From Laetmonice hystrix (lineage: Eukaryota): 64,000 nucleotides of DNA. The translations under genes and the position numbers were made by a program. Shown piece after piece: positions 1,291-48,600 of the stretch (its first letter is position 1; every line of letters starts with the position of its first letter). The stretch lies in contig OZ249452.1 in NCBI GenBank assembly GCA_965235115.1, forward strand, positions 13,392,001 through 13,456,000, read 5' to 3'. The notes beneath the pieces are model-generated. The model saw only the letters and a program-made list of their open reading frames with translations. It was not told the DNA's origin and ran no database searches.

Positions 1291-1307
1291 TGACCTGAGC
1301 TTGACCT
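1291..1307 (-). promoter_or_regulatory. DR5 element AGGTCA-agctc-AGGTCA
   Basis: Exact consensus; a third half-site AGGTCA at 1319-1324. Confidence 0.55.
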
Positions 1308-2007
1308 CAATCACACAGAGGTCATTAGTGTCACGAGGACTAATTGTGACGTAACATATAACATTTCATTGCGCCTGTGGTTCCTGCTGGTTCCCACGCT
1401 TTTGGAGTTGAGTGAGGTAAAGAGCCTGCAGGACCAAGGCGGGGGTCACTTGAGGGATTGCCTCGGTAGTGGTCAGTTGTATTGCTGTTTTAATGCAGGA
1501 AGATGAAAGGGGGCGGACAGAACAAGAGACAGACGGGCAGACAGAACATGTTGAGTTAGTCAGATCTGTCTCAACATGTGGTTAATTCGTGTCTTTTCCA
1601 GTCTTACAATAACTCACATCACCCCCATGTAGTATGACATTGTCGACGCTTTCCACCATCTGCGCGCTGCCAATTATACAAAGTTCATGCCAGCATTTCA
1701 TCCAGATGGCAACCCCAGCTAATTTACCCAAGGGGTTCCGCCAAACCGAACTATCCTTTCTTCACCCTTAACACCCCCAAGCACCCAGCATCTCGGGCCC
1801 CCTTCTCGTATCAATTCGGAACCGAATCCGACATGTTCAGTTTTCTTAACCACTCAACCACCTTCAAAATACCCGTGTTTCCGCCACTTTACGCATGCTC
1901 CAACTCCCTTCAAAGGAAGTCTTGTATTTTTTATGTTCCCGTGGAGGTCATAGCAAGTGGGCCGTAACGGTTCAGGTTACCCCCATGATAGCGCTCCCAC
2001 GAACCTG

Positions 2008-2160
2008 GAGGTAGGAGTTAGGGCCAGGAGCAGGGCTAGGGCTAGGGGTAAGTTTCTAGGGAGGTCCGGGTACTAGTAGTAGGGTTTAGGGTTGGGTTCA
2101 GGGCCAGAAATAGTGAAATATTTTATTGTTTACCAAAAGATTTTCCGGAGACGTTACCAT
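2008..2160. repeat. Degenerate (TTAGGG)-like interspersed repeat family member
   Basis: GGGTTAG/GGGCTAG-rich tract ending GAGAYGTTACCAT; a similar copy at 328-451 and related tracts near 38008-38100 and 38700-38750. Confidence 0.5.
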
Positions 2161-4793: not shown

Positions 4794-4946
4794 NNNNNNN
4801 NNNNNNNNNNNNNNNNNNNNNNNNNNNNNNNNNNNNNNNNNNNNNNNNNNNNNNNNNNNNNNNNNNNNNNNNNNNNNNNNNNNNNNNNNNNNNNNNNNNN
4901 NNNNNNNNNNNNNNNNNNNNNNNNNNNNNNNNNNNNNNNNNNNNNN
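4794..4946. other. Assembly gap (153 N)
   Basis: Run of N. Confidence 1.
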
Positions 4947-4954
4947 GCGCAAGC

Positions 4955-4962
4955 AAGAGAGA

Positions 4963-5017
<55 letters not shown>

Positions 5018-5060
5018 CGAGAGAGAGAGAGAGGGACAGAGAGAGTCAGACAGAGACAGA
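4955..5060. repeat. (GA)n microsatellite
   Basis: Directly visible, abutting the assembly gap. Confidence 0.95.
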
Positions 5061-5261
5061 TTTTTCTTTTCAAAACGGTGTTTCCTCTCACTAGTCCGTT
5101 ATTTTTGAGTACGGATTATAAGATATGCGTATCTAAGAATTCATATATTTCTACCACGTTCATACACCAGCTTGATGACGTAAGAGTGGCTTCATGCATA
5201 CTCACAGCTTATTAGCGGTATATGTGTGTATGTATGTGCCGATGTATGTGGCATGCATTAA

Positions 5262-5601
5262 AGGTGCTATTCGTGAACAAAAATTCATTTTTTTTATTTT
5301 TAATTTTGTTGACGTTTATGTGATCCCACCTATCATGGAAATAGATTCACAACAAAGGAAATCAAAATTTTTCATGGATAACGGCACAAATGGGGCTCTC
5401 TCAGAAGGCCTGTGGAGACCCTGACACGCCCCACCATAGGAAATGGCTCTATCTCGGTGCGCACCGAGATAGGTTTCAAATGCTGCACACAAACTAACAG
5501 AAGGTTTATCAGGCCAATGGTATCGGTAGGAATTTGTTCTAGTACTATGTGCACAATGTATGATAGGAGAAATGCCATTCTGTGCGAGACGAATAGCACC
5601 T
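5262..5601. mobile_element. Kolobok-type MITE, 340 bp
   Basis: Perfect 13-bp TIR AGGTGCTATTCGT/ACGAATAGCACCT, flanked by TTAA on both sides (5258-5261, 5602-5605). RR termini with a TTAA TSD fit Kolobok rather than piggyBac. Internal 24-bp perfect palindrome at 5449-5472. Confidence 0.75.
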
Positions 5602-6399: not shown

Positions 6400-6589
6400 T
6401 TATTCTCAGAATATCTGTGCGTGTAGGTGCGTGCGTGTGCGTGTATGCGTGAGTTGCCGGGGAGGTCGTGCATTGTGAAGCTGGCCTCTGTGAGCGCCCG
6501 ACGGTCGGCAGTCGGCAGTCGGCAGTCAGAAGAGAGTCGGCTTCCCGGCAGGAACGGACGTAGCCATCTCCACCAAGACCCACATCAAA
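6400..6589 (+). promoter_or_regulatory. Putative TR 5' UTR / promoter-proximal region
   Basis: GC-rich stretch with (GTCGGCA)3 at 6504-6524 directly upstream of the candidate ATG; TSS not determinable. Confidence 0.4.
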
Positions 6590-6641
6590 ATGTCATCTTC
6601 TCCAGGATCTGGTGGGCTCGGACCTCATGAAAAGTCAACAG
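6590..6641 (+). CDS. TR: TR putative first coding exon ([17 protein letters not shown])
   Basis: aaaATG context, in-frame upstream TGA at 6476-6478, perfect donor CAG|GTGAGT, phase 1 matching the next exon; implies a 25.2-kb intron. Confidence 0.6.
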
Positions 6642-9600
6642 GTGAGTTTCACAACCATTTCCCTATCCTCTTGTGTTCCTAGTCGACTCCAAAAAACTGT
6701 TTTTTGATGGGAGTATTTCGGGTTTGGGAGGCGAGTCGGCCAACTTAAGCTGACTGGGCGGTCATGGCGGCCGCTCGTCCTGTCGCTTCGGCTCGGAGAC
6801 CCGATTGGGGACAAGTTATTTTCGGAGAGTGGCTGCTTGGTCTGACAGCTCTGGGTGTTTAATTGGTATTACGTAACAACTACTGATTACATTCTGCCTT
6901 AATAATACAAGAGGGATGAGGATTCTGAGGACTGAGTTGTCAATGAATCACATTCTTGGCCTTTGAGCACAAAATAGCCAGCTGTATGTGGTCGCGCCCA
7001 ACATATATAGGTCTCTTAACGTGGATTGGCAGCAACAACCTTGTAAAGAAACAACCAACGCCCGCTGAGAGAACTATGTAACAATATAGCGTTAACCAGA
7101 GTTAGTTCTAGCAATCAAGTCGTTCAGTTAACGTAGATTAACATCATGAAATCTGTGCCGAAGCCATTCAATAGCTGATGGTCGGGAAGGAAATCAACAT
7201 GCCATGAGAAATGCATTCTAAAAGCTTCCATAGACCTCGACAAACTCCTGGAACCATCCTTGAGCTAACAGTATGGGTGTAGACACAGCTCCAAAAAGAG
7301 TTGTAGTCACTCGAAACACCGTTATATTTCAACATTACTGATGAAAACGTAGCAGTCGGTATGTCGTACATGTTCCGTATAGAGTAACGGTGCCTCTGAA
7401 AACACCCCGTCTCATCCAAATTAAACATTTTCCTCCCAAACTAAACCTCAAGTCAGGATGTATAAATGATAACGTCATCTTTTATATCTTATGTTACCCG
7501 TACCGGCTGCAGAGAGAGCAGATTTCGTAGCTGAAAGAAGCTGGTGTTTCCCTAATGGTTCTGTTTTGCTGGGAGAAGCGACTGGCAGCCATCTTGTCTG
7601 TGGATGACCGAGCGATGAGATCTGGAGCACTGGGGTCATTCTATGTAGGCCACGGCCTGTCCGGATCGCCAACTGGCTCAACCGACGGGTCCACCTCAAC
7701 TTGAACATCTCAGCCCATTCAATCCTTAAAATAACACCTGGGATCCCTTGAACTATAAATTGTATTCATAGGCTGAGCAAACCACAGCTAGCAGTGAAAC
7801 CCTACCAGTTATCTTACTGGGTGCTGGCGAAGCCATTCATAGATTGTTGTGTATGCCTACATCAAAATGGCGACTTGCCACATTGAATCCTCGTTTTAGA
7901 TTCCTATGGCTCCCAAACCAAATGATTTCCAACAATACTGGAGAGGTGTAACCGAACTATACCTACTTAAGAATACCACAAGATCAGCTTATGTACAGTA
8001 GAGTTAATGGCTGAGATTAGAGACATAAGCTCAGCTAAGTCTGAGATCGGTACGGTACATTAATATTTGATATTATGCTGTTTACCGTGTATTCTAGGGG
8101 TCAGTATCTATCGGGGGAACAAACCAAGGTGTCAGAATGATGTCGCCAACCATCAACGTTTATTCCATTGCATATTCAGTGACATGATCATTAGAGCTTT
8201 GCGTGTATTGATCAGTGTTTAATTAGACATTGTAATGAATATTCGTAAATTAGCCTTCTGACTCTAAAATACCTAAAGAAAGGCAGTTTGTGCCTTTGCA
8301 TCAAAACCATTTTCTGCGTGAAAGGCGTTTGAATTGTATATTTTACGTTTTTCCTGTGCTGTATGATAATGTGCATTCTAAGGATTCTCTTGGTATTGTA
8401 GGCATATATCCGTCCTAATATGTTATGTTTCGACCGGCGTTGTTCCGTTTGAACGCTTTATTTTATTTCTCTATGTTTCTACCTATCAATTGGGGGATTA
8501 AAACTAGAGAACGCGTTAAATATATTACGGTTTCAAGTCTTCGTTATTTTAAAGGAATACTTCGTCATGAATGTGTGCTTGCTTACAGTCTGAGGTGGTG
8601 TAAAAATCATCATTACTGGCTCACTTAAAGGCCAAGTTCACGTGGATATAATATACTATATAATATACAAATAATTCAACCCCGATTGGTTCTGACTGCT
8701 GTAAACATGAAGTATTGTATTGTATATATTATAAGACGGTAGGTGCCTAAGTCTATTTAATTTAGCCTTGGATAGACAGGAGATAGCTTATTATGACCAA
8801 TGGTCAAAAGTCCGCTACTGTCTGTGTGTCCTGCCGGTTGCCTCAGTCGGCTCAAGGACGTTCTCGTATCCCGGCTGAGAACTCAGACCAATCAACAGCA
8901 GGCCGAGCTTCCCCGACAACCGAGCGGTAGTCGGGGGCATTCGGCATCACTCGGGTTTTTGACGTCACGGGTTCATCGGAAGTGGGTCACACCAGCCGGG
9001 TGCAAAAATAGCCGACCTGCATCGGCACAATGTCACGGCGGCCGTGGTGGGAGAGTTCATGGGTTGGGTGAGGGGGGTGGGTGGGTTGATGGAGGCGCGG
9101 TGGACTGGTGCACGATAGACCGGGGAGGGGGTGGGGTGGGTGGGTGTTCATACGTGTACACATGCGTGGTGAGGAGGTACATTCGCCTTGGCCGTGCGCC
9201 AAACACCTCGGTCCTTCTAGGCCTACTCGCTCGGAATGGCTGCCTGCCCACCCGCCGGCTACACAGAGCAACACGCCTACCCTATCTGCGGGTCGATTCG
9301 CTATATCTAAAACTTACCAAGCAAATCTATGCATGAAGAGGGCGGTAAATGTCTCTTAACAACGTATAAAAGACCCATCTCGTCTTCCTAATGCCCCTTT
9401 TTTCAAGTCATACCCAAAAGAAAACTCATTCGGTGAGTGCAACACTTAGTCCGACAAGAAAACCTATCCCACTTTGATGACGTTTGTGGATGACGTAAGC
9501 AGTCGTTTCGTACTGCACTTTAACCCGAGTTTAAGGGAAACTTCTATATACTACTGCTGTGGGGCGGCTTGTAACGTTATGTGTCCTGACTGTACGGGCC

Positions 9601-12600: not shown

Positions 12601-15600
12601 CCATCACGAGAAGGTCAACACAGAGTGTTTGACCTTTAGTTTCGACCGTCATGTCATCCAGGCTTCCGAGACGACGGCCCAAACTATGACGTCATATCAC
12701 TGAAGCGTACAGGCGAACGTATATTATAATACGGTATATTCTTAGATTAAAAAAGTATAATCTCAGTCATTGATTGTGATAGATTAGACGCCTGGGCACG
12801 CGCCTCCCTGTCACTTACTGAAAACATCTAGTGTCACTCACTCGCAGTACACACAAAGGTCAATCGTATACTCAAGATAAACATCACTGAAGACATCTGT
12901 CTTTGATATGCTGTGAGANNNNNNNNNNNNNNNNNNNNNNNNNNNNNNNNNNNNNNNNNNNNNNNNNNNNNNNNNNNNNNNNNNNNNNNNNNNNNNNNNN
13001 NNNNNNNNNNNNNNNNNNNNNNNNNNNNNNNNNNNNNNNNNNNNNNNNNNNNNNNNNNNNNNNNNNNNNNNNNNNNNNNNNNNNNNNNNNNNNNTTTTGT
13101 ATGCTTTCACGCTGCAGAGCGCCTGCTCTTTTGTCCTGAGGAGCCTCTATTTTAGTTCAAAACTACAACGGCCTTATTTTTGTAAAAAAGGACATGCATT
13201 TGCTCGCTAGGAACACGCTATACAAAGTCCTGCAAATTGAAATACAGGATCTTAAATCGATTTTTACTGCATTGGTGCATTATGTGGTTGTTGTCCTGCC
13301 CCGAGCCTAAAAAGTTTAGAAGTAGCCTAGGTCCCATGGTCTGACAGATGCAAGCTTAAGAAACGCGGATGCAACCTCTACCCCGCAGAAGCTCTTGCAT
13401 TGGAACTGGCCGAAGCCAACCCGGTTCCCAGAGGACCTAGAGCTTGGTGTTTATCAAAGAAGAACCTTTGCCCTTCTCAGAGAGGGGCCCCTCTTTTCCC
13501 TGTCTGATCATATTGCACGGGCAGGTGCCTGGGAGGCCCAAGTATCTGACCACAAGCCTCTCACCCCAATTGAGGCGACCAACGCCCTCTGATTCGACAA
13601 TCCATCAAGTGCGGCTCCTAAGGCGTCAGCAACACCTTCTCAAGAACCTCAGACGCGCTTTGTCTCATGCCCCCGCTCGGGCGACAGGCGACCCTGGGGG
13701 TCACCTCATAGTTCTAGCTAAGGCCCCGAGTTGTGTAACTATACCCGACCCCTTGACCAGGGTTCTCCCGCCCCCAGTGGCCGTCTGCTATTAACGTGTA
13801 GCCGGGCAGGAGACAGGAACGCGGGTATTTTGGAAGCCTAGTCTGACCCGAGCAGAGGACGCACACCCTAACGTCATTTGTCAGTGTCAGCCATGACCAG
13901 TGGAGCATGACGTTCAGACCGGTCCTGGCCTCCGAAAACTTCGACACGGCGCGGTGCTGAAGTCATTACACCTATTATCGCCCACGATGGAAAAAACATG
14001 CACTTCAAACATCAAAGTCTCGTCATCGCGAGACTGAGCCTTGGCGACATGAAGCCAAGGTGGCATCCCGGCCGACGGGATGCACTTGCTTGTGTGCGAT
14101 TGTCCTCTCTTTACCCTACAATAATAGTTCAATTATAGTCTACCTATCTGTATGAAATTTTATCAGAGACTATGTTTGGCGCATGAATATTAGCCCATAT
14201 TAACATGGCGCCTGGGGAAGCGACTTAGGACTTAGATTTGACAGACAATTTGCAGCGGTCGCCATCTTGTCCTCGAGTTAGCGTTTCCCTTTCACCCCAG
14301 CCGGTCACACAGGACTGTACATACCCCAGATACACTACCGCCCAGCGGGGCGGCCTATTAACACTGCACTTCATGAATGGCCTGCCCCACTCGTGACCCC
14401 CTGCTGTCGGCGGGTTCAAGGACATAGTACAAGGATTGTCCACATCTGCCGCCAGGTGGACACACGTATCGGGCTGCGGGTGGGTGTTCGAGTGGGAGTC
14501 GTGCATGATATCACGTGAGGTTACGTAGCCAATACGCCCCTGCCGAGTGTTACGTTACAGACCCTGGCCTGGCTAGGACGACCAGGTGTAACACGCCCAT
14601 TCAGGTCAAACCTGAGAACTGTAGCGTTACATTTCCCTGTCCAAACCCAGGTGTAGGTAATGCTGAAACTCTTAGTTCTAACGCCCTCTCTCATATTGCG
14701 GGGCCGACAACGTATTCAATGATATACCAAACAGTAGCCTGTTGCTGAATAGAAACTGTTTGTTTATTTTGAACAAGGCTGTACTGTCTGCCATTTTTTG
14801 AGTTGAAAGGTGTCTTGTTGTGGCCTCTTCATATTGAGGCGACGTCCGGGCACTGGGAAGGCAGCCCAATGCTGCAACTAGCGATAAATTTATTGATCGA
14901 CAAGTCAGCGTCGAGATGGACCAAACAGAACGCTCCATGTCTGAGCCCCCCTCCACTTACACATGTTACACACATTACATACACCTGCTGTATGACTCGA
15001 ACAGGGAAAAGGGGGTGGCCTCCTCGGTAATGACCGAAAATATTTAAAATCCAAAATCTGACCTTGTAACGAAGTCCTACCAGACGTAGGCCTACTCTTT
15101 GACGCGCGAAAAATTAGGTATAGAGAGCCGATCGATTTCAACGGGTTGTGGACGATCATAAGTACTGAGTCGGAAGTGTGGTCTTCTGCAAATCGGTATA
15201 ATTAATGGATCATGTCAATTACAAAAGAGTTTTAGTGGCCCATAGAACATTTTTAATTCACAGAGGAAAAATAAAATTTTGTTAGGGAAACTGTTTTTGT
15301 GCACGTTACAGAGATTCCTGTGATTCTCTTGTTGGGGTCGTCCATTTTGAGGAGCTTTACCCGAACCTTCTGCCGTCGGGTTTCTTTGGTCGGGCTCGGC
15401 TATCCACACCACCATGTTGACTGTGAAAATATTTGTCAATCGATGTGCCGAGACGCAGGCTCAGCGAATGGCGGGCGCGAGTTGGTCGACCTCGTGACTG
15501 GTCGGAAAGTTACGTAATACACAGACGGTATTGATCGCAACCCACGCATGCGCAGAGACTTGGGTATATAAAACCTGGCTCGGTCCATTGTGCTTAGGTT

Positions 15601-18600
15601 GAAGTCGCAGTTCACATGACAACGCTTGGATACCAATGTCCTTGTCCTACATTATCGATCAGTTACTAATGGTAGGCCTATGGAGGTACGGTATAATTCA
15701 GCATATTGCCGCGCTATCATCAAGCGAGCGATAATGAAGGTTAACATAACACATTTCCACCCAGAAACAATGAAACGAAATGTTTCTCTCTTTGTGACGT
15801 CAGAGCTGTTTGCCGGTTTCACCACTACAGGCGTTCGTTTTGATCTGTTCTGTGACGGGATGGTGGGGTAAAACCTTTATGATGACCTTTACAATGGTCA
15901 ATAACCCCCCCCCCCCCTCCCACTACACAACACAGAACTATAACCCCTCACCCCTCACCTCCACCAGTAAATAATTCATAGGCCATGACTGGGGGCAGGA
16001 ATCCATGCTGACATTTCTCGTCTGCTTCCTGGATTAAACATTGATCCCGGATAAAATGCAGGTTGCTAAACTCGGGAATACATTTACATAAAATGACCGG
16101 TGGACTTTCAGCCATAATGCAAAGCGAGTGGCTGACCGGGAGAAATTGATCGGGATGGTTTAGTCAGGCATATTCAGAAACTCATCACTGAAACTCCAGC
16201 AGCTGTAACTAATATCACCTCCACAGAGGGTAGCAGACCTGAAGGTGAAGCGAACACGCACCTCTTGGCCACCCTCCAACAACCATAATACCGTGTGCAC
16301 CAGGCATGTTACGATTATAAGACATAATCCCATGGTGCAGACCAAGACAAAGGTTTGGGTGTATTACCGATCGCCCCCACCACCATACAGGTGCACTCAG
16401 GTGACCAACGGTCAAGGGATTGACTGACCAGTCGTGATGGTAGTGTTGTTGTTCGCCCACTCCCCACCCTTTTCCTAATGGTTAAAGGGTTGTGTTTTTT
16501 TGTGTCTCTCTTTCCGACTGCCTGCATGTTGATTACCTGTTGTGGAATACACTGAGGGCCGGTATCTGGAACTGGAGTATTGGTGATTAGACCACCATAC
16601 TGATAGAAAAACTGGTTGTATGTATACACAAGATGTAAATAAGTTCCTCTGTGAGAACTTCCTTGACTAAAACAATGTACAAGCGAGATACATATCAAAT
16701 CAAATCAATGCTGTGCGGCCCTAGGAGAGCCTCTGAACAACACGTTTCAGGTCTCAGAGCTAGTTTTGGTGGCTCGTAGTCTGAAGTCTTGGACCCGAGA
16801 GAGGTGGCTGACCGTACCAGGCCATCCGTGTGGTCACAAATAGTTCCCCCTTACGTCAGACCAGACGACCACCGTCCAGGTCAAACCCGGTTCACGTTAC
16901 GTCACAACAAAAACCGTTATACTCGACCTGATCCCATCTTAAATAGCTTGAACCTTGTACATAAGTCATTCACAACATCGCTGCCTTGAGTTTTCACTGC
17001 TGAAGACGGCATCTATATCGATTTATGTTGCCTCCTAGTTTAGTCGGAGACGGTTGTTACCAAAACACAGATAGGATAAGATTCCTGTCGGTAAACTAAG
17101 ATAAAGACCAGATTTGACAAGTTTGATACATGTTTAAATGTAAACTCCCGAGGGAGTGCTACATCCCGGACCAGCCCTCGTCTAGTATTTGCTCGGCTGG
17201 TTTCTAGCCAACACCACCCGCCAGGCCTGCACTGTTTAGTGGATATCGACAACATTCAGCTCGATAACAGCTTTTAGCGATACGCTAGGGTCAGGGAAAG
17301 GTCACCAAGTGGTGAAGTGTCTTTTGTGGATGAGATCTTTTCCTCCAAGAAGAAGTTAGAACATTTAGATAAATTATTACTTTATATGTCAGCCAGCATG
17401 AAGGAAGCGTAAAACGAGTTCCAGATTTTAAAAAAAGATTAAGTCAAATCCGAAATACCTTTTAGAAGCTTATAGTGCAATCCCCAGTGAAGTGGAATAT
17501 CGAGTTCATAAACTATTTTTTATCCATCTTATGATGCATATCATCATGCCATAAAAGCAACGCACGAATCGGTCACTGTGAATGGGAATTTCTGATGTGC
17601 AAGTTCAGTTGTTTGAAGTCCTCGATCAATTTGAGCTGATGTTCATTTAACTTTGGCTACTTTTCCTTAGATGATACCACTACTTTGCTAGTAGCAATAC
17701 ATTAGGACTCGCCTTACGACTGAGATTCTGTTACTAATTGTTTAATACAATGCTGTGACGGTCAGATTCAACAACCCCTATTATCGCCCAGGTATCACCA
17801 GTGTAGACCGAAAGGACTCCCTCTGAGCGGGATCATATTACAGGAGTTCATAAAAGGGTATGGCCCCTGTGGGTGGGTACCAGGGCGGTAGCGGGTGGGG
17901 TAGCGGATCGAGACCCCCTGTCGGGCCCGCCCGGCCGCCGTGTGGAAGGAGTAGCCGGCCAGCCCGGGAGGTCAGATTTCAAGGGCATTCAGTACAGGTT
18001 GAGGTGAGCCTTGAGGAAGGTTTCAGATCAAGTATGAATGGGCTGGACATGGAGGTGACGAATCCTAGGGTTAGTTTGGAGACTACCAACTTAATCCTGG
18101 TCACCTTTAAAACATGAGTGTCAAGGCGCGTATCTGGAGACTACTACCTCAATCCTTGTCACCTTGAAAACATGAGTTTCAAGGCGCGTACCTAGAGACT
18201 ACTACCTTAATCCTTGTCACTTTTATAACATGAGTTTCAGGGCGCGTACCTGGAGACTACTACCTTAATCCTTGTCACCTTTAAAACATGAGTTTCAAGG
18301 CGCGTACCTGGAGACTACTACCTTAATCCTTGTCACTTTTATAACATGAGTTTCAGGGCGCGTACCTGGAGACTACTACCTTAATCCTTGTCACCTTTAA
18401 AACATGAGTTTCAAGGCGCGTACCTGGAGACTACTACCTCAATCCTTGTCACTTTTATAACATGAGTTTCAAGGCGCGTACCTGGAGACTACTACCTTAA
18501 TCCTTGTCACCTTTAAAACATGAGTTTCAAGGCGCGTACCTGGAGACTACTACCTCAATCCTTGTCACTTTTATAACATGAGTTTCAAGGCGCGTACCTG

Positions 18601-21600: not shown

Positions 21601-24600
21601 AATACAAAATTTTCTTACTGTAATACAAAATTTTCTTACTGTAATACAAAATTTTCTTACCGTAATACAAATTTTCTTAACGTAATACAAAATGTTCTTA
21701 CCGTAATACAAAAGGAATGACAAAAAAGTGAGATATCTACTTCATCTGAACATAACTACAGTATACTTCTTTTCCATAATCTGGTGGCATTCGAGTACAA
21801 CACATCTGGGGCTGCTTTATTGAACTTGGGCATCAGATTTATAATAAGTTTAGCTGTGATACCATGGAAATACCTATCCACGTATTTCTTTGGCGCCACG
21901 TACTGTATAGGTCAGAGATCTATTATAGGTAGGTCCGGTGAGTTATGTAGGTTTGAATGACGTAACCCACGTGTTGTTTATCAGGGCCGGGGCGGTACGA
22001 CCCGCTGGGAGGGGCGTGGTTTCCATCACTCAGCCAGCCTGATTGGAACACCCCACGGTCTCCATGGTAGCCACGTATCCATGGAAGCCACGGGCGGCAT
22101 CAGCAGGCTTCTGCTGGCCCTGGAGACAGGGGCCGAAGCTATACATCCGCCTGGCCAGGGCGGTGTAACAGCATGGTATCTCCCCTAGTAACAAAGATAG
22201 GTCGACTTGAAGCCAGCCATGACCGTTCTAATGGGTCGTTATCATGCCAGCCTGGCTGGTGGCCTCCCAAGAACTACAGCCGAGAATGTCTACAGCTCCC
22301 AGGCCCCTGCTTGCCTTTCCTGTAAAGAATTTAGCGCTGGACACGATGAGACCCTAGACGGGTTGGCAAGCCCTCGTCCTGGCATGTAGTGTTCCTTGCC
22401 AGCAAAGCCGTTATCATTGTTGCCGATAGTACACGCGCACCAACTCGTCCATATGGTTATCTAGTGAGTATTTCGGAAGAAGAGAACGGATAATGGAAAG
22501 ATAGATAAGTGTAGCAAGATAAAGATATAAGTGGACAGGGGTAAAAATCTCAAAGTAACAACAGAAATGTAAATATTTCTTTCCCATAATGACACCAGTA
22601 AAGATCTAGGAAGAGTCCTTGATTCCAGTTTCTCTCATCCAATCGAATTTAACGAAAATATTCACTGCAACAAATATCAAACATGAGGCGATTTTGTAGC
22701 AACTCGTCCAAGATGAGATGTATTGAGCCTTTTAGTCGACTAGCTTTCCATTGCTGCTTACAATACGTTATCGCGGACAAGGATGGTAAACAAAATTGAG
22801 GATTCAGCTGTGATAGCCATCAAAACAATGCCCCCTTCATACGGTGTAGAGCAGAGGCTTAGAGACATAACTTGACAAGAATATGAACAAGGCTGAATGA
22901 CCCAAACCACTGTAAAACCTTCGAGCATTTCCCGGAATCTGCTGTAGATGAACTCTTGAAACACCTCTATGGCTATTATTCACTGACACAGCTTGACTGA
23001 TAGCAATACTGAATGAATTGAGCTCAAAGTCCACCAAAGACGCGGTTTGAATCAGAAATCAAACTTTGCAAAATGTATGGCAACCTACATGAACCCTTCG
23101 GGCTAATGCTGGGTTGGAGAGGGTCGAAAACAAATAAGATCAAAGAAATGTTATGTGACTTGAACACCAATGTTCTTAAAGAAAAACCACGACAGCGCCA
23201 GGCAGGTTAGCTCAGGAACCAGCCAGGTTGCTGGGACGTCCTGCAGTGGCTAAGTAGGTCAATGTTGATTTATAATGCGCATGCGTGGTGACCGGCTCGG
23301 TGCAGGGGAGCGGCCACAACCGAGCGACACGGCTGAAGCCAAGCCAGTTGGTGGGTGGTGCAGTCTCTGACTCTGTGTCCCATGTAGGCCGACTAAACAT
23401 CAGCCATGGCTTCATAAGAAAAGGCAATCGAAGCCGAATCAACTGGCAAGCCTTCATGTGCAGTAAAACTTTCTTTTACAAAACTATTAAAATGTTATTG
23501 TTAAATGATTGCAATGCTTTGTGCAAAGGAATCTCTTCTTTTGGCCACAGAACATCCCACACCCAGGCAGGCGTACGGCTTACATGAACCGCATTTTAAT
23601 GAATCGATGCCAATCAATATTTCCCTACTGTCCTCAAAACAGAAACTCCGGTGTATTCCTATTTTAGTTTCATGCACCCATGTCCCTATAGTGTGTATAC
23701 GAGCTTCCATACAGAAGCCATACACCCGAGTCCTTGTGGTCTCTGACCGAGTGAAACGACAGGGTTCATGCTCGGTTCAAGGCCTACATTTGCGGCACTC
23801 GGGCCACATACTGGTTTATTTTATGGTCCACAGCGTTTGGGGACCGGGGAAAACACTGGTGTACTGACATATTGGTATGCACAACCCGGGTCGGCCACCC
23901 CATATCGGCCTCAATGGTCGCATACATTGAGCTCAACCTTACAGGCCTACATGTAAATTTACTCACTCGCAACCTGTATATGTTTCTCTGTTTTAACGGT
24001 GGTGTGTGGGCTCCTGTTTGGGGTTCTATATGCTGGGACATAGGAAATATCAGAGAAAGTATACTTGTTATTCTCATAGAGGGAGGCATGGTCAGATAGG
24101 TATGTAAATAACTAAATACAATTGGCACCAACCGTATTCTCATTCTTTCCTTCCCTCTCTACCTCATTCTCCCTCTCCAATTCTCTCTGTCTCTCATTCT
24201 CCCTCTCTAGTTCTCTCTGTCTCTAATTCTCCCCTCTCATTCTCTCTCTCATTCATTAATACACATGGGCCCTTCTGACCTGCACCTGACCGTGCTGTGA
24301 CCTAAGCCGGCCTCCTGAGAATTACATAACCGACGTTGATGCCAGATAACATATTGCCGGTGGATGGCAACCAGACCGAAGTCAGCCGCGGCCAGTACCA
24401 TTGTCGAGTCTCGGCGCCCTCCGACGTGGCTGTTTGCCAACACTAGCCTCCAACTACAGCCGTCAACCTACCGCTTCGACATTACAAGCTATGTATCATT
24501 CGACACAGAACTTATGAAACGCCCTACACATCAGCTACAAATACTGCAAAATGTCACAGACACATGATATCGGCATTAATGATAAGGTGGCGCCTAGTAG

Positions 24601-27600
24601 CAGAGCATGTATTCCTTATTCGCCGACACTTGATTGCATTACATGTGCCTGTCGAATCAATCCGGTGCTTGGCCCGCGACCTCTTGATGGTAATATTGAG
24701 CGAGCCGATGACGTAATGAGTATGTATGACGTAATAAGCGCTGAGGTGAACAGGAGGTCAACAAGGGTTTGTGTCAATACAGGTGTGTGCCTGTTATATT
24801 TGATCTTCTGAAGCAGGTAGATATGCTTCATGGACCATGAAAGAAACTTCAGACACTCCTTGGTGTAAACAACCTATAACACTGAGAAAATCCTCTAGAC
24901 TTAATGATGTATGCTCATTCAGGATGACGGAACAGTTTAAATTTTGATAAATTAGAAAATGAGGATTTTGGCAAGTCATTCCAATAGCTCTTACGTATGA
25001 ACCAACCCACAAATTGCAAACCTAGAATGGTAGAGAGAGAGAGGCCAAAGCGTGACTAAGTGGGAGGTGTTACGCGGTAGATTCTGGCCAGTCGGAATCC
25101 CAGTTCACATTTGCTGAAATCTAATTGCCTTTTGCCGCCTCCGTCCTTCCTCTGAGGTGGTAACGGTAAGACCCAGTCTCCACCCGCCGATTACGTAACA
25201 CCGGATTACGTAATCAGCATATGCGCGGTTGGTCGATAATACGAGACCTAAGTTCACTAGGGGTTGGTGCGTCTATCGAAGTAAATAGCAAAGGGTCTTC
25301 CAGTATTCACCTCTCACACAAAGAATTATGTCAGATAATAGTCATGCTGTATTGGTGAATCCTGCTATAATTGCGTTTTCACCATGTGCCAAAATCGTGT
25401 AAAGCCTCTTAAAAGCTGATGACGAATAGTGGAAAGTGGCGATTCCGAATGCAATGAACTCGTCCAATCACAAACACAGAATCCCTGGCACAGTGCCGTC
25501 TGCATTCTGTGCCAGGGGCTGCCATTTTTCTCCGCTAGAGGGACCCAGTGTGTCTCTCTCCCTCTTTGTAAACAAACATGGTGGGTATGGTGAAAAGTTC
25601 ACGGCCTAGAGACAGGAAGCACATATAGCCGGGGCCGGGCGCGCGGATCACTCGCCATTTCCCTGACCCAAGATCTGCCAGAGGTCCAGTCGAACTGGAG
25701 CACGCAAGGTCATAGAAACAGGAACGGCAATCGGAGCGTTCCGTAGCGATCAAGCAGACGACTTTTGAACAGCGCCGGTGGCCAAGGCTTGCAGTGCGCT
25801 CGCCATATAATCAGCTGGGTTCACGGATTTATATATAAACGGGCGGCGAGGAACGTGAGGAAAGGAGTGCCCTAAAGAATGAACGTCTTTGGTGAGATTC
25901 TTAATCTATGATAACCAACAGCAAACGCAAAGTATACATCGTAAGAGTCCTTCCAGCCCCGTGCCCGGCAGTTGACCTCTGAGCTAGGGGAGTTGAAATG
26001 GAACGTCCTCTCTCTGTTGTTTTTCTTCACCTTGAGTCGGTCGTTCATATTCCATATTATCAAGCTCAATGTAAAGTTACTGCGGCTCATTCCGACTTTT
26101 TGAAAAGTTTTAATCGGTGGCTGGAAGTTATTAAGTTATTAACGTACATGTGTATTAAGTTCCAGCAAGTCGAAGGGTGTGTAGCATCGTCTGTAGTGGG
26201 CCACCCGTTTACATTGGAACCTTTTAAAAAAGAAAACCAGAATTTACTGGCTCCTCAACAAGTTCCTTGTTCTACAATTTTTACTGCATATTTCTGTGAA
26301 TTCTGAAGTTATTTTTGTGTGTGTGGTTGGCACTTAAAGTTCAAGAAGGGGTATACCAAGACAAGGCGTGTGCCTGGCAAATGAAATGCCCGGATTCAGT
26401 AGCATAAAGTTATTTTAAAAGTTATGCAAGTTCAATGCCTATATCAATTAAGTCGCAAAAATAAAAAGACGCTTTCTATTAGAGGCAATAATAATTGTTA
26501 CATTGGACATGTCTGTCATTTGAGTTTTTGGGCATAACCTTTTGACAAAGCAGTTCTTTCATTTTCCCCATCCCATCAAAAAGCAAGAGGCGCCAGAGAG
26601 AATCTTGTGCTATTCTTATCGGTCTTTTGTTGTTGCCGTTTCATTAGAAAGCACCTTATCCCAAGTGGGTAGACTTGTCCTGTCCACAGCACGGGTTCCC
26701 CAGACGTTAATGACACGGTTGGACTGGGGTCCACCACTGTACACAGGGCGGCCGGTAAGTGGCCCGTTTCCCCCTGGGTCGAGATTTCAGTAATTAAGTT
26801 GGTGCCACGTTCACTTTCAACCTTGACCAGGTCATAATATGCGGGCCCCTCAAGACTTTCTCCTCGGTGGCGTGTCGGCCAAATGTAATGGGTGTTCTGA
26901 TGGATGTTTGGACAAATTCCTCTTGATGGCTGACTATTTGGCCATTCTGAAATCAAATTGACTCCTAAGTCGCCAGGGGTATGCATCAGGATATGAATTT
27001 TAGAGACACAGTTGCAGGTTCGTAGCTACAAGATGACAGTACCCCTAACAGGCCTTTGACAGTCCCATATGGGACACCCAGAGAAGCCAATGCAATTAGA
27101 GACTTCTCCCGCATTCCCTCATGTAATTCCCTAAAGATTAGCAAGGCTAGATGAAGATTAGTGTTCAGAGCTGATCTTGAACTGCTGTTCATGCACATGA
27201 ACGATCTCTGCTGAACATCGGCCAGGTTGGGTCTACCTCTTATCACTGCATGTGTTTATCATCCAAGGTGGATACATGGATACATCTTTCTCCTGCAGGG
27301 AATGTCATAATAATTATCAAGGTCAAAGTCCCTATTAATTGTCAACGTGTCAGTCTTGAATTATGAGCACGTAGACGGAGTTTTATGTCACTGGGGATGC
27401 CAGGGGGAATTATTGTGTTGGTATACTGCACACTCTAGTATGCATGGTTGTTGGTTGGTGGCAGTATTGGCAATTCTCTCTCTGGCAAGAGAATGAAAAG
27501 GCCTTGCTCACGCATAACATTGGGAATTAGAATAATTATGAAAGAGGTTTGCATGGAATATGATTCATTGTCCTCAACCACATTGGAATAGGGATGTTCA

Positions 27601-36600: not shown

Positions 36601-39600
36601 AGTACCCTATGTGTGACTATAGCTTTGGCACATACAAAGCACTGGGAATATAGGCCTATTGCTAAATATACACTGAATCTAAAAGTTTCCAGAAATCTAT
36701 ACTGTGGCGCTGCCACTGCCAAGCCGTGTTAAAAGCAGGCCTTTAGAATTCAATCTACCAGTGTAGGCTAGAGCTATACCGCAGCCTATGCAATGATGAG
36801 CGTGTGTAGACTCTCTATACTGGAACATAAATGTGCCCTGATTTACCTAAGTGTGTAATCTTGCACCAAGTGAACTTGACCTCCATGTCAAACAACCAAA
36901 CTGACCGACGTGCGATGCACGTGTAGTAGTTCCAATGTCACACCGACATCGTGGACGCTGTGAAGATCCTGACGATCCGCTAACAGCGCTCCCCTGTCGT
37001 CTGCTTCCTCACGACGTAATGTTACGCAAGGTGTGACGCCGCTGTGGCCTGCAGATTGAGGACTACATCCTCCGCTCTGCTGAAGTGAAGTCACATGCGC
37101 AGTTAGCGCTGCCTTGCCTGAGTGTGTGTGGTGGCAGCCCGCCCGCCTGCCATACATACCCGCCCTCTGTTGGTCTTCAGCGAAATGTTATGGGATAAAA
37201 AAAACTGACCCGGCGAACGCAGCTAAAATCGATAGGTGGAGGGTCTGCTGCCTTTGGGGTATATTGGGGGGAATAGGTAGACTAACCTAGAGTCGGCCAC
37301 GTACCTTGAGTCGGCCACCCACATTAACACTGCATTGGTTGAGGCCAACCCATTACAAATTATGTCATCTGAAAGCCCATTTTTACCCTTTCTTGTGGTT
37401 CTTAAATTATCCACCAGAGGTCAGATGGTTTTTATTTAGGGTGGGTGGCCGACTCAAGGTACGTGGCCGACTCTAGGTTAGTCTACCTACTGGCTAATAC
37501 TCTTCAATATAGGTTTCGGCAATCCCAGCCGAGACAAAAGTACCAATGTTTTTCTCATAAGAGTAGTTAGTACCTAATGATTTGTGCAGTAAAACCTTTT
37601 TGGCTTGCATAATAATTAGATGGGGTTTCAATTGATAGAGATGAATAATTGGATAATTATTACATATATAAATAGCCTAAATGGCAAAAATGGTGATTAA
37701 AGGGGGAAAGATGAAGACAGAAACAATACGGATACATAATGTCTGTAATGGGTACGACATTTAAACCGGCACATCAAACATTTCGGCCTACATATGAAAC
37801 CATATGCTATAGCTGTGCATGCATGTACAGATGGCGATGTATAGGGATAGAACTATCCCCTATAGGCTGCACACATTGTAAGTATACTGTGAGCACCTGT
37901 GTGGTCAGATACAGTTCACACTGACCACCATAACTGTCTGGCCACGGGCCCTGCTGGGGATTCCCCCATGCTAGCATCCACACGAAATAAACATAAACTG
38001 GAAGTAGAGGTGAGGGTTAGGGACAGGGCTAAAGAAAGGGATAGAGAGTCTAAGTATTAGGAAATTATTGAGAGGTGGGGTTGGGATTAGATTGGGGGAG
38101 TAGGAAAATGATAGATTAAAACAAAAATCCTATACCATGCACCAAATTTGGTGGATATTTGATGACGGCGATCTACCGCCATGTTGACCCCCGCGGTCAC
38201 TCATGTCACAGTGTCCGTGCATGCCGAGGTCATCCGACACTCATTATCTAGAACAATGGCAGATTGAACCGTCAGGTCATTGAGTACAATTTGCTGGCCC
38301 GTGACATAGATTTGTTGACACTCACACGTCCCTCGGCGTGGTAATTACCGTCTGTGACGGCAAACGATCTGAATATTGTGTACGTCGATACGGTAACGGC
38401 AGCACCGAATAATGAGACACATTGGGCAAGCGTCGTTTAACACGTCAAACACAGGGAGAATTTCAAAAGTCACGTTTGTAAAGTATTTTCATGAATGTTT
38501 TAGCCTAATGGCAACATTTAGACTAGAAAAGTTAATACGCTTGCAAAGATGATGATATAGGGCGAATACATCAATATTTCATTGAAATCAAAATATTTAA
38601 GTGAGGCTGTGTCGATTTTGATGGTAAATAAAAAAAAGACGCACAAAGGAAGGAACCATAATCACTTGAGAAATTGGATGAATGTTGGAGTCCCAGGCAT
38701 TATACCTATGCCTTATTTATACCTAGACCTTATACCTATCCCTGTAGGCATGTAGGTGCTCCATCTCTGTGCCAGCAAACGTGCCATGTTACGATTTGAC
38801 CAAGTCCGTACCTCTTAAAATTGTTTATTCGACATTCCTATGGATGTCGTGTGCCTTCGAGTCAGCCTGTTGGTGGCCGGTTTGGTCACGTCAGACAACG
38901 CACTATAAGTCTACCTCGGTATTCATTATGAAGTCAATTAGGATAATTTATGGATGGAAGTAAATATTTATACTTTGTGGTGCTTCTGTAATGTAGGTAA
39001 TTTATGTGTGTGTGTAATTTGTGGGGTTGGGCCTATAATTTGTAGCACTTTGGTAATTTACGTAATTTATGTGTGGAAGTTTGAGGCCTACTTTGTAGCT
39101 CTTTTGTTCATTTGTGGAAGAAGCTAAAGTGAAAACAAAAAAAAATGTCTAAAACATGAACACCCATAGGCAACACTTTACCCCCCTTCTGTTGGTTTTG
39201 TCTGAAATCAAAATATACACAACTTTATTCATTAAATTAGCAAATCACTTATCCTTTTCTACTGCTGCTCTCTTCCGCATACCCCTCTTTCTCCCTAGTT
39301 GTCCCAGTTGTACCAGACGCTGACGTCAGCGTTCCTATTGTTGTTTCAGGGACGCCATACATCCCGAGTTATATGGACCTTAGTAACGGGCCCGAACCAT
39401 GTGTTGTCTGTGGCGACGCTGCTACTGGATACCACTACCGGTGTATGACGTGTGAGGGTTGTAAGGTACGTACCACACTCAATACTGCTACTACTATTAC
39501 ATGTACTACCTTATGTACTACAGTAGTACATACGGTAGTACATGTAATAGTAGAAGTCTATTCCATGTTGTACTACATGTTCACTGCTGTGTACATTCAC

Positions 39601-45600: not shown

Positions 45601-48600
45601 TTCACTGAGGGAGTGTTGACCGTCCTTGACCTAGTTTGGTACAGAGTTCACGTCGCGGCCACTGAGCGAGTGGTGACGGCGAGAGGTTGAAGCTCTGGCA
45701 TGCAAGCGTCTCACTGACCGCCCTGACCCCTGGCGGCCGACTGGCAGCTGACATGATCCCAGCCCACTCAGAGCGTCCGGCCATATGTGACGTCATCACG
45801 ACACAGACGTATTTATGGGCCTGGTATACAACATATGTTGTGTCAAGGGACAGTAGGAGGACAGGGGAGTAGATCTCAACAAAACACGAAGCAGCAATTA
45901 CGCCAAGAGAACTCATCAGTGACCATTCTGCGCAACCTGAGAATCCCGACAGTGGATTTTAGTTGATGAGTCTCTCTAAGACGTTTATTTAAACACTCTA
46001 TTGAAACTCAAGTTCCCAAGGTAGACACTCCATTGAAAGTCAAGTTCCCCAGGTAAACACTCCATTGAAAGTCAAGTTCTCCAGTTAAAAACGCTATTAA
46101 AAGTCAATTTCTCCAAGTCCTTCATTCTGAGGATACTTTGATCTGAGCACCATTCGCAACACTTTGTAATATTTCCAAATAGCTAATTTTCTTGCCGGCC
46201 TAGTTTATGTAAAATGCTTAGTTTTATTGAGATTTGGAGCCAGTGACAAAAACACTGACACAACTTGGCCTAAGTCTTCCTAATAATTAAATATCCTATG
46301 AAATACTTGTATCTCGTACGAACGAACAAGGAATTTTAGAGGAAGGCGTGCCGGCAGCAGGCTATGTTTATAATTTGCCTTTGCCACACCACTCACAGAC
46401 TCGCAGTTTGCTAAGGTCAGCTCAAGGTCGCACACCAGAGAAAGCTGCGTTTAGAGTTATCATTAGGATTAGGGAATCACCCATAGATCCTGACACTAAA
46501 GTTGGAAGGATTTGGCAACACACCAACTGTCCCAAACCCGGGGAGGCCAAGCGTCCAGAGTGGGGGTTAGACCTGACCGTGCAGAGGGGGACCTGGGTAC
46601 CATGGTCTGAACAGCGTCATGGATCAATCCCGACCAGGAATGTTCAGAGTCGTTCACACAGGAATGTTCAATCCTGTTCACGAGGTAATCAGAGCGGCAA
46701 GACAAGGTAAATAGTCAGAATGAATGACTTTTTGAGCGATACGAATCGCTGCACATGTTTTATTTTCAGCCTTTAATGTGAAGCTCCTCATCTATCTTCC
46801 TGATGGATTCCTCTATGATTGTGTACTTGGTTTTTAAATGGTCGGAATCTTTTATTCATTTCCAAAAATTGATTTGTGATTGATTTACTATTAAATACCT
46901 TTCCCGGAACCCTGGCTCCATTAGTAACGGACTCTTACAGGTCCTGCAATATCCCAGGACAAATTTTCAAGAACTTTTAGAGACATTCCCAACACAACAC
47001 GTATAGTTTATATAGACGACCGCCTGATTTTGCCGACTGTCCCCCAAAGGTTCTACAGCAGGGGAAGAGTTCCTCGAGCTGGTACCCATGCCACCACTTG
47101 GCGACGTGTCGGTTGATCTGATTGAAGAACCGACTAAAACTTGACAAAGGTCAGTGATGGGTCAGGACTTTCCGCTCGAGTTGTCCGCCCCAGTCGCCCA
47201 CCACCACCACCGCCCGGGGGTAGGACACGCACCCCTTTGTGGGGTTGTGATCGGAGACACTGGGACGTGTATATCTTCGTAACCTTGGGACACAACCTTG
47301 TCATGCTGCCTCGGGAAGGTCCGGGGACGGCTCGTCCACGTCCCGACGGGACGCTCAGGCCTGGGGCTGGGATGAAGATCTTCCCAGACACAATTTCCCA
47401 TTCTACTCTTCAGCTGGTTTCTTGCCGTCTTTTGACTCTCACAATTGTACATCACAGCTAGGCTATCAACGTTGACTGAAACTATCCCCATGGCATGACC
47501 TCAGATGATTGCATGACTTCAAGAGTCACCTTTCAAAATAAAACAAAAATACTACAACCTGCCATTTAACACTCAACCTTGTTCGAGGCAAAAGAATCCC
47601 CGAGACCCTCTGCAAGCCATAGTATCTGATAGGAAACCATCGGCTATGGGCTCAATATCTCCCCTTTTCCTGTGTAGCCAAACAAGATGCGATTGTATTG
47701 GCCAATTCGGCACCGCGCTCCAGCCACCGTGGCGCCCCTCTGCGGACAAAGTACGCAACTATCCGTCACGTAACGCATGGCGACCTTGGCAATGACTGAA
47801 GAGGCCACAGAGGTCATGGAGGATCCGGGTCATGTACATGTAGGGTATAGGGTATACGTACATTGTCTCTGAGCGTTACCGTGTCGCCTGTTTGGGTGAG
47901 AGTAGACGCAGATGTCTGTCTGCAGACAGCAGGGTCGAAGGGGAAGGCGTACGGAAATGAAACGGTCTTGGCAGAGGTCATCAATGTAGGCTACGTCTAA
48001 TAATAGGCCTATTCATCATATCGTATCAGGGTGTCTGTGGGGGAGGGTGATTGCGAGTGCCTACTTGTTGTGGTTGTGAGTATGGTTGGGTATGTGGTTT
48101 GGTGAAGGGTGTTATGGTGACGTCAGATGGGGGTTATGACGTACAGATCTAACCCTGAAACCCACGTTCAAGAGGGTTGACTAATGTTATGAGAGGCACT
48201 TGTCAACAAGAACATATTTCTTCCAGTTTAAGCTGGTAAAAAACCCTTTTCCAGAATAACTAGGGGGAGGGGGCGGTTCCAATGTCCTCCATTGACAGTC
48301 TACAAGTTGTGATGCCAAAAAAGCTTAACAATAAATAAGCTAAATGGAATATAAATTAGTAAACTAACCTGGACATTTCTTTTCTGTTGACAGGGTTTCT
48401 TCCGACGAACGATCCAGAAGAATCTGCAGTACCACTGCAAATGGAACAACGGATGTGTCATTGACAAAAATACCCGTAACCAATGCCAACAGTGCCGCTT
48501 CAGGAAGTGTATATCGGTTGGCATGGCAACGGATCGTAAGTATTTACCGGAAAGCTGTTTCAGGAGGAATGTAACACGCTGCGCTGCAGTGAAGAATTAA

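What the first reader, a model, noticed from the sequence alone, without database searches (positions are those of the whole stretch)
1291..47164. Battery of DR5 (RARE-type) elements across an invertebrate thyroid hormone receptor locus
Seen: five exact RGKTCA-N5-RGKTCA sites (1291-, 16878+, 17288+, 23763+, 47148+) and five one-mismatch sites (24276-, 24287-, 24744+, 37902+, 46414+). Flanks are unrelated, so they are not copies of one repeat. I found no exact DR1-DR4 and no DR5 downstream of the stop. A rough independent-base estimate at ~42% GC gives about 0.1 exact DR5 per window. Known: DR5 is the classical RAR/RXR element, also bound by NR4A/RXR, whereas vertebrate TR/RXR prefers DR4. Inference: this TR may be a direct retinoid/RXR-heterodimer target, or autoregulate through a DR5-shifted specificity. 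Either would be a retinoid-thyroid coupling worth testing in an invertebrate.
Basis: partly seen in the sequence, partly recalled or inferred. Interest (0 to 1): 0.78.

Follow-up and report, generated by a model that had tools for sequence, protein, structure and literature searches.

The report
DR5 motif cluster at TR gene
Five perfect nuclear-receptor "DR5" binding words really do sit in single-copy DNA upstream of and inside the long introns of a thyroid hormone receptor gene. This genome is full of such words, so the excess is about 5- to 15-fold rather than 50-fold, and nothing yet shows that the sites work.

Summary
All five exact RGKTCA-N5-RGKTCA sites are at the stated coordinates, in single-copy DNA. 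No other spacing from 0 to 500 reaches this count in the window. Genome-wide, the pattern occurs 9,928 times, or 1.0 per 64 kb. In non-repeated DNA the rate is about 0.3-0.4 per 64 kb. DR1 and DR4 are commoner still. Poisson P(>=5) therefore lies between 4e-3 and 2e-5, before look-elsewhere.

I built a coherent 384-aa TR gene model with seven GT-AG exons. One site lies 5.3 kb upstream of the ATG, three lie in the 32.7-kb intron 1, and one lies in intron 2. One-mismatch sites are not clearly enriched. Half-sites do not cluster around the sites.

Eight other lophotrochozoan TR loci show no DR5-specific signal. No RNA data and no close relative's DNA were available.

Published work: the oyster TR promoter carries a weak "CgDR5"; invertebrate TRs bind DR0-DR5 without preference; annelid RAR/RXR binds DR1, DR2 and DR5.

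Verdict: a real, modest local excess. I put about 50% on a background fluctuation and about 45% on some sites being working response elements. This scan flagged similar receptor-repeat clusters elsewhere in this genome.

The parts
1291..1307 (-). Exact DR5 AGGTCA-agctc-AGGTCA, 5.3 kb upstream of the putative TR start codon and separated from it by the gap at 4794-4946. The word GTTACGTCACAA lies 36 nt upstream on the same strand (1344-1355).
   Evidence: single-copy flanks
16878..16894 (+). Exact DR5 AGGTCA-aaccc-GGTTCA in intron 1. It is flanked by CTTACGTCAG (16850-16859) and GTTACGTCACAA (16896-16907).
   Evidence: single-copy
17288..17304 (+). Exact DR5 GGGTCA-gggaa-AGGTCA in intron 1.
   Evidence: single-copy
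23763..23779 (+). Exact DR5 GGTTCA-tgctc-GGTTCA in intron 1.
   Evidence: single-copy (only the CT-rich stretch at 24138-24254 matches elsewhere)
47148..47164 (+). Exact DR5 AGGTCA-gtgat-GGGTCA in intron 2, 1.2 kb upstream of exon 3.
   Evidence: single-copy
24276..24303 (-). Three half-sites at 11-bp period, AGGTCA-cagca-CGGTCA-ggtgc-AGGTCA. This reads as two overlapping one-mismatch DR5.
24709..24760 (+). Two TGACGTAAT words (24709, 24727) directly upstream of the one-mismatch DR5 AGGTGA-acagg-AGGTCA (24744-24760).
37902..37918 (+). One-mismatch DR5 TGGTCA-gatac-AGTTCA. The other one-mismatch sites are 12846+, 14383-, 41383-, 46414+ and 55009-.
6590..6641 (+). Putative first coding exon of TR ([17 protein letters not shown] + first base of a Gly codon). 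It has a caaaATG context and a CAG|GTGAGT donor in the phase needed by exon 2. The 5' UTR and transcription start are unknown.
   Evidence: inferred, no RNA data
39350..39465 (+). TR exon 2: the TR N-terminal signature [15 protein letters not shown] plus the first zinc finger, ending at CEGCK.
   Evidence: signature as defined in PMC2045677
48394..48535 (+). TR exon 3: second zinc finger.
48756..50770 (+). TR exons 4-7 (48756-48961, 49342-49473, 49906-50164, 50523-50770 including the stop codon): hinge and ligand-binding domain.
4794..4946 (.). Assembly gap between site 1291 and putative exon 1. A second gap at 12919-13094 lies inside intron 1.

Best explanation
The five DR5 words are real sequence features of the non-coding DNA of a thyroid hormone receptor gene, lying upstream and in introns 1 and 2. 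Most likely they are not a dedicated, coordinated 'battery'. They look like a local fluctuation of a word class that is abundant throughout this genome, in which exact RGKTCA direct repeats of several spacings are 3- to 11-fold over-represented. At most one or two may be working nuclear-receptor sites. Shown: the sites, their uniqueness, their position in the gene and the genome background. Inferred: that no common function links them.
For: Genome background is 9,928 exact DR5, or 1.01 per 64 kb. DR4 numbers 13,048 and DR1 20,715, each far above its reversed-pattern control. Poisson P(>=5) at 1.01 is 3.9e-3, which predicts about 38 such bins genome-wide. In the first 10.9 Mb of contig C1, 1-2 of 171 bins reach 5, and one 69-kb stretch holds 4 separate sites plus a local cluster. 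The 100 kb just upstream of the window holds seven exact DR1 with unrelated flanks, so dispersed clusters of perfect DRs occur next door as well. One-mismatch DR5 number 9 against about 5 from shuffles, so they are not clearly enriched. There is no extra half-site clustering within 150 bp of the sites: 3 extra against 4.5 expected. CpG o/e around the sites is ordinary. Eight other lophotrochozoan TR loci (264 kb) hold 5 DR5 and 6 DR6, about this genome's background density and not DR5-specific. First-stage readers flagged other receptor-repeat clusters in this genome, which is a look-elsewhere effect.
Against: All five sites are in single-copy DNA, where the background is only 0.32-0.37 per 64 kb. 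That gives P(>=5) of 2-4e-5, or fewer than one such bin expected in the whole genome. Only spacing 5 is affected. The 200 kb of flanks hold a single DR5. The locus is itself a nuclear-receptor gene, and a published precedent exists for self-regulation (PMC4692385). Two exact sites share an adjacent 12-mer, GTTACGTCACAA, and a one-mismatch site has two adjacent TGACGTAAT words.
Confidence: 0.5

Rival explanations
1. TR self-regulation. TR, alone or with RXR, binds some of the upstream and intronic DR5 elements and represses or induces its own gene, as proposed for the oyster CgTR promoter and known for vertebrate TR-beta.
For: The sites lie upstream of and inside the TR gene's own long introns. 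Oyster CgTR binds a DR5-like element in its own promoter and represses that promoter. I located this element 1.3 kb upstream of the annotated gene start in the fetched oyster locus (PMC4692385). The local excess in unique DNA is strong.
Against: CgDR5 has two mismatches, and CgTR binds DR3 > DR2 > DR5 > DR0 > DR4 > DR1. Schistosome TR binds DR0-DR5 alike. No DR5 preference therefore explains a DR5-only profile. No binding, expression or conservation data exist for this species.
Confidence: 0.2
2. Retinoid or RXR-heterodimer input. RAR/RXR binds the DR5 elements, so that TR transcription responds to retinoids.
For: DR5 is the classical RAR/RXR geometry. Annelid RAR/RXR binds DR1, DR2 and DR5 but hardly DR0, DR3 or DR4 (PMC5821490). 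An RAR-like gene, with colinear DBD and LBD exons 51-77% identical to a nemertean RAR, sits at C29:6,299,118-6,304,152. The profile is spacing-specific.
Against: The window has no exact DR1 or DR2, which the same heterodimer also binds. Nothing links retinoids to TR in this animal. The ancestral RAR is reported to be a low-affinity sensor (PMC5821490). The same statistical caveats apply as for the main explanation.
Confidence: 0.13
3. The sites are response elements for another RXR partner or orphan receptor (NR4A/RXR or similar), acting in composite modules with a bZIP factor that reads TGACGTAA-type words.
For: GTTACGTCACAA lies within 40 nt of two exact DR5. Two TGACGTAAT words abut a one-mismatch DR5. 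By my post-hoc hand estimate, 3 of the 7 hybrid-word clusters in the window lie within 60 bp of a DR5(-like) site, against about 0.2 expected. That NR4A/RXR binds DR5 is my background knowledge, not tested here.
Against: The motif was chosen post hoc. The 12-mer is a common word genome-wide (1,156 copies, 6.7x the control). There is no general association of CRE- or PAR-type words with half-sites across 264 kb. The association is absent at DR5 sites in other species' TR loci.
Confidence: 0.1
4. The sites are copies carried by a transposable element or other dispersed repeat, or are an assembly artefact.
For: Many genome-wide DR4, DR5 and DR1 hits are repeat-borne. The same 16- or 17-mers recur in arrays, and the strand counts are asymmetric (3,348 against 6,580).
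Against: Stretches of 0.4-1.2 kb around all five sites match only themselves in the genome. The flanks do not align with each other. No site touches an N run.
Confidence: 0.03

Closest known systems
CgDR5, the atypical thyroid response element in the Pacific oyster TR promoter (Huang et al. 2015, PMC4692385)
   Same: It is a DR5-geometry element in the non-coding DNA of a lophotrochozoan TR gene, proposed to mediate TR self-regulation.
   Different: CgDR5 is one promoter-proximal element with two mismatches (TGATCA-cgggt-AGGTCA), supported by EMSA and a reporter assay. Here there are five perfect elements spread over 46 kb, one upstream and four intronic, with no experimental support.
Classical DR5 retinoic acid response elements bound by RAR/RXR (vertebrate RAR-beta2, Hox and Cyp26a1 are from my own knowledge; annelid RAR/RXR binding is from PMC5821490)
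   Same: Two RGKTCA half-sites in direct orientation with a 5-nt spacer, with several elements spread through a developmental regulator's locus.
   Different: No evidence of RAR/RXR binding, retinoid response or conservation. There are no accompanying DR1 or DR2 elements.
DR4 autoregulatory element of vertebrate TR-beta genes (the Xenopus TR-beta-A promoter, as cited in PMC4692385)
   Same: The logic of a receptor gene carrying its own response element.
   Different: The spacing is 5, not 4. The window has no exact DR4.
Repeat-borne nuclear-receptor site arrays in this same genome
   Same: The same word class: exact RGKTCA direct repeats.
   Different: Those recur as identical 16- or 17-mers in multi-copy elements. 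The five sites here are single-copy.

Membership tests
DR5-type response element (sequence definition) | Two RGKTCA half-sites, same orientation, 5-nt spacer | tested here: met
   Five exact matches
Functional RARE (RAR/RXR target element) | Bound by RAR/RXR, and the linked gene responds to retinoid | not testable with these tools
   No binding or expression data, and no RNA runs for this organism
Functional RARE (RAR/RXR target element) | The organism encodes RAR | tested here: met
   A colinear RAR-like exon series at C29:6,299,118-6,304,152, 51-77% identical to a nemertean RAR. RXR was not identified specifically.
Functional RARE / TRE | Conserved in orthologous loci | tested here: inconclusive
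   Only distant TR loci (about 70-82% protein identity) could be fetched. They hold 5 DR5 and 6 DR6 in 264 kb, with no positional homology.
TR autoregulatory element | Lies in the regulatory DNA of the TR gene itself | tested here: met
   The gene model places the sites 5.3 kb upstream of the ATG and in introns 1 and 2. The transcription start is unknown.
TR autoregulatory element | Bound by TR or TR/RXR with the matching spacing preference | not testable with these tools
   Published invertebrate TRs bind DR0-DR5 without a DR5 preference. This species' TR has not been assayed.
Vertebrate-type TRE (DR4) | 4-nt spacer | tested here: not met
   No exact DR4 in the window
Repeat/TE-borne receptor sites | Flanks present in many copies | tested here: not met
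   The flanks match only themselves
Thyroid hormone receptor (NR1A) gene | zf-C4 and Hormone_recep domains, the TR N-terminal signature (G/P)YIPSY(M/L)xxxGPE, and best matches to TR orthologues | tested here: met
   Pfam hits on the exons. [15 protein letters not shown] is present in exon 2. The 384-aa model is 80-82% identical to Capitella, Owenia and Lingula TR.

The most novel reading that the evidence does not exclude
A lophotrochozoan TR gene is controlled through several perfect DR5 elements in its upstream region and giant first intron. These would be read by an RXR heterodimer (RAR/RXR, or TR/RXR with relaxed spacing), some together with a bZIP factor on adjacent TGACGTAA-type words. 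That would couple retinoid or RXR signalling directly to thyroid-hormone-receptor dosage outside the chordates.
Probability: 0.25. Interest if true: 0.55.

Novelty: new member of a known kind. Interest (0 to 1): 0.3.

Why it matters
If some of these sites work, they would be candidate elements for testing how a non-chordate TR gene is wired: by self-regulation, as suggested in oyster, or by retinoid/RXR input. That bears on how thyroid and retinoid signalling were linked before vertebrates.

As it stands, the main lesson is methodological. In this genome, perfect nuclear-receptor direct repeats and CRE palindromes are several-fold commoner than composition predicts. Motif 'batteries' must therefore be judged against the genome's own background, not against base-composition or shuffle estimates.

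Tried and rejected
- **Repeat or TE origin.** Rejected. The flanks of all five sites are single-copy.
- **Another gene in the upstream 39 kb.** Ten of the longest ORFs outside the TR exons gave no Pfam match above threshold.
- **Half-site clustering around the sites.** None found.
- **Unusual CpG content at the sites.** None found.
- **General association of CRE/PAR/hybrid bZIP words with half-sites.** None across 264 kb. The association is limited to two or three DR5(-like) sites.
- **DR5-specific enrichment at TR loci of eight other lophotrochozoans.** DR5 = 5, but DR6 = 6, and the density equals this genome's general background. This is not TR-specific evidence.
- **RNA evidence for the transcription start and exon 1.** No RNA run holds the locus. 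Read laying was not used, because the only holders are contig sets of one study whose kind (RNA or DNA) is not on record.
- **Locus of a close relative** (exon 6 is 94% identical). The Owenia TR was not on record.
- **A TATA/CRE/DR8 stretch at 8.96-9.43 kb as the promoter.** Dropped as the main start once exon 1 was found at 6590. It remains only a possible internal promoter.
- **Continuity across the two N gaps.** Not tested, to avoid reading gap letters.
Full report
**Observation.** The pattern RGKTCA-N5-RGKTCA occurs exactly five times in the window: at 1291-1307(-), 16878-16894(+), 17288-17304(+), 23763-23779(+) and 47148-47164(+). There is no exact DR1-DR4, DR6 or DR7. There is one DR0, three DR8 and two DR10. 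One of the nine, 55009(-), lies downstream of the stop codon.

**Is it more than chance, judged inside the window?** Yes.
- Dinucleotide-preserving shuffles give 0.19 sites. None of 100 shuffles reaches 5.
- The window's own 179 half-sites predict 0.25 per spacing. Over spacings 0-500 the mean is 0.26, and the only values above 2 are 5 (spacing 5) and 3 (spacing 8).
- Among 720 column-permuted versions of the half-site, each at 16 spacings, the only other cells reaching 5 come from one tandem repeat.

- The 627-Mb genome holds 9,928 exact DR5, or 1.01 per 64 kb, against 2,908 for the reversed pattern.
- It holds 13,048 exact DR4 and 20,715 exact DR1. TGACGTCA occurs 92,376 times, about five times its control.
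- Words built on GGTCA/TGAC are therefore over-represented generally, partly through repeats. Identical 16- or 17-mers recur in arrays, and the strand counts are asymmetric.
- With a mean of 1.01, Poisson P(>=5) is 3.9e-3, which predicts about 38 such bins genome-wide.
- In the first 10.9 Mb of contig C1, 1-2 of 171 bins reach 5, driven by repeats.
- For non-repeated DNA the background is lower. There is one DR5 in the 200 kb flanking the window (0.32 per 64 kb). After setting aside recurring words by eye in the C1 list, the rate is about 0.37. That gives P(>=5) of 2-4e-5.
- The true excess is thus about 5- to 15-fold. A per-window probability between about 1e-5 and 4e-3 applies before allowing for the several spacings examined and the many windows read. 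Readers flagged other receptor-repeat clusters in this same genome.

**Not repeats.** Stretches of 0.4-1.2 kb around every site match only themselves in the genome. The sole multi-copy piece is a CT-rich low-complexity stretch at 24138-24254, which contains no site.

**What the locus is.** The window carries one thyroid hormone receptor gene on the + strand.
- Pfam zf-C4 and Hormone_recep hits mark the exons.
- tblastn with lophotrochozoan TRs, plus a splice-site search, gives exons 39350-39465, 48394-48535, 48756-48961, 49342-49473, 49906-50164 and 50523-50770.
- Exon 2 begins in phase 1 at the conserved [11 protein letters not shown] block, so an upstream coding exon is required.
- The only strong candidate is 6590-6641. 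It has a caaaATG context, encodes [17 protein letters not shown], ends in G, and has a perfect CAG|GTGAGT donor in the right phase. In length and start it resembles the Owenia N-terminus MSSSVSSS....
- The resulting model has 384 aa and six GT-AG introns. It is 80-82% identical to Capitella, Owenia and Lingula TR and 70-74% identical to mollusc TRs.
- It carries the TR N-terminal signature defined in PMC2045677.
- Exon 1 is inferred, because no RNA run holds the locus.
- Ten of the longest ORFs elsewhere in the window had no Pfam match above threshold.

**Where the sites fall in the gene.** Site 1291 is 5.3 kb upstream of the ATG. Sites 16878, 17288 and 23763 lie in the 32.7-kb intron 1. Site 47148 lies in the 8.9-kb intron 2.

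**Assembly gaps.** The two gaps lie between site 1291 and exon 1, and inside intron 1. No site touches them, but linkage across them rests on the scaffold. I did not test this, so as not to read gap letters.

**Finer anatomy.**
- Near the exact site at 23763 there is a three-half-site array with an 11-bp period (24276-24303, middle half-site CGGTCA). There is also a one-mismatch DR5 at 24744, preceded by two TGACGTAAT words.
- Two exact sites (1291, 16878) have the same 12-mer, GTTACGTCACAA, within 40 nt. That word has 1,156 copies genome-wide, 6.7 times its control. Across 264 kb there is no general association between CRE, PAR or hybrid bZIP words and half-sites. This is a post-hoc lead only.
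- The DR5 sites are not embedded in half-site-rich patches: 3 extra half-sites within 150 bp, against 4.5 expected.
- Their CpG o/e is ordinary.
- One-mismatch sites number 9 against about 5 from shuffles, so they are not clearly enriched.

**Surroundings.**
- The cluster is local: the 200 kb of flanks hold one DR5.
- The 100 kb upstream holds seven exact DR1, five of them RGGTCAAAGGTCA, with unrelated flanks.
- This shows that dispersed clusters of perfect direct repeats are not unusual in this genome.

**Other species.**
- I fetched TR loci of eight lophotrochozoans (oyster, Lingula, Capitella, Lineus, Lamellibrachia, Patella, Mercenaria, Liolophura), 264 kb in all.
- They hold 5 exact DR5 and 6 DR6, against 0.93 per spacing over spacings 0-500.
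- Only GGTCA-containing patterns reach such counts among permuted controls.
- However, 5 per 264 kb equals this genome's general density of about 1 per 64 kb, and DR6 is as frequent. This shows a general excess of receptor-type repeats, not a TR-specific DR5 signal.
- The sites share no positional or flank similarity with those in the window.

**Literature.**
- In the Pacific oyster, a DR5-like element with two mismatches in the TR promoter binds CgTR in EMSA, and CgTR represses its own promoter. CgTR binds DR0-DR5 in the order DR3 > DR2 > DR5 > DR0 > DR4 > DR1 (PMC4692385). I found that element 1.3 kb upstream of the annotated gene start in the fetched oyster locus.
- Schistosome TR binds half-sites and DR0-DR5 alike (PMC2045677).
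- Platynereis RAR/RXR binds DR1, DR2 and DR5 (PMC5821490).
- An RAR-like gene is present in this genome, 7 Mb away on the same contig.

**Interpretation.**
- For a shared function: the excess in unique DNA, its restriction to one spacing and one locus, the identity of the gene, and the oyster precedent.
- Against a shared function: the genome's richness in such words, the look-elsewhere effect, the lack of enrichment of near-consensus sites, the lack of local half-site clustering, and the absence of any DR5 preference in assayed invertebrate TRs. No conservation, accessibility or expression evidence could be obtained either way.
- My estimates: about 50% that the cluster is a background fluctuation with no common function. 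About 45% that at least some sites are working receptor elements (TR self-regulation about 20%, RAR/RXR about 13%, another RXR partner or a composite module about 10%). About 3% for a repeat or assembly artefact.
- If the sites are functional, this is a new member of a known kind (receptor-gene response elements, with CgDR5 as precedent), not a new kind of system.

Noticed in passing
window, 20 positions (e.g. 781, 4010, 8960, 39321, 52457/52481, 53278/53294/53405/53421); whole genome: The perfect CRE palindrome TGACGTCA occurs 20 times in the window. The genome holds 92,376 copies (9.4 per 64 kb), about 5 times the reversed-word control despite the CpG. The word is over-represented genome-wide, partly in tandem arrays.
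   Followed up: partly
whole genome (G000): Exact nuclear-receptor direct repeats are strongly over-represented genome-wide: DR1 20,715 (11x control, mostly AGGTCAAAGGTCA), DR4 13,048 (7x) and DR5 9,928 (3.4x). Many are carried by repeats, for example AGGTCAATCAAGGTCA arrays, or AGTTCACCCTAAGGTCA followed by AGGTCAAAGGTCAAAGGTCA.
   Followed up: partly
100 kb upstream of the window (C29:13,292,001-13,392,000; window-relative -81848, -56668, -48779, -36882, -20606, -17744, -2803): Seven exact DR1 with unrelated flanks, five of them RGGTCAAAGGTCA. This is about twice the genome-wide mean density.
   Followed up: partly
window 1344-1355 (-) and 16896-16907 (+); also 24709 and 24727: The 12-mer GTTACGTCACAA sits next to two exact DR5 sites, and two TGACGTAAT words sit next to a one-mismatch DR5. 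The 12-mer has 1,156 copies genome-wide (6.7x control), so it may be a common bZIP-type site.
   Followed up: partly
G000:C29:6,299,118-6,304,152 (+): A colinear series of exons 51-77% identical to a nemertean RAR (DBD and LBD). This is a candidate RAR gene on the same contig as TR, 7.1 Mb away.
   Followed up: no
window 8956-8989 and 9366-9440: TGACGTCAC is directly followed by a DR8 (GGTTCAtcggaagtGGGTCA). About 400 bp downstream there is a TATAAAAG and a GTGAGT donor, in a patch of high CpG o/e. This might be an internal or alternative promoter in intron 1, but that is speculative.
   Followed up: no
window 18077-18814 and 21504-21713: Two tandem arrays in TR intron 1: a 58-bp unit x 12.7 copies (92% matches) and a 21-bp unit x 10 copies.
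   Followed up: no
L009:2774-2815 (Liolophura sinensis, about 7.2 kb upstream of the TR gene start): A dense half-site cluster, GGGTCA-n6-AGGTCA-n5-AGGTCA-n3-TGACCC, upstream of the chiton TR gene.
   Followed up: no
window 63652-63864: A 45/87-bp tandem array, also noted by another first-stage finding (s1-351889). It is unrelated to the DR5 question.
   Followed up: no
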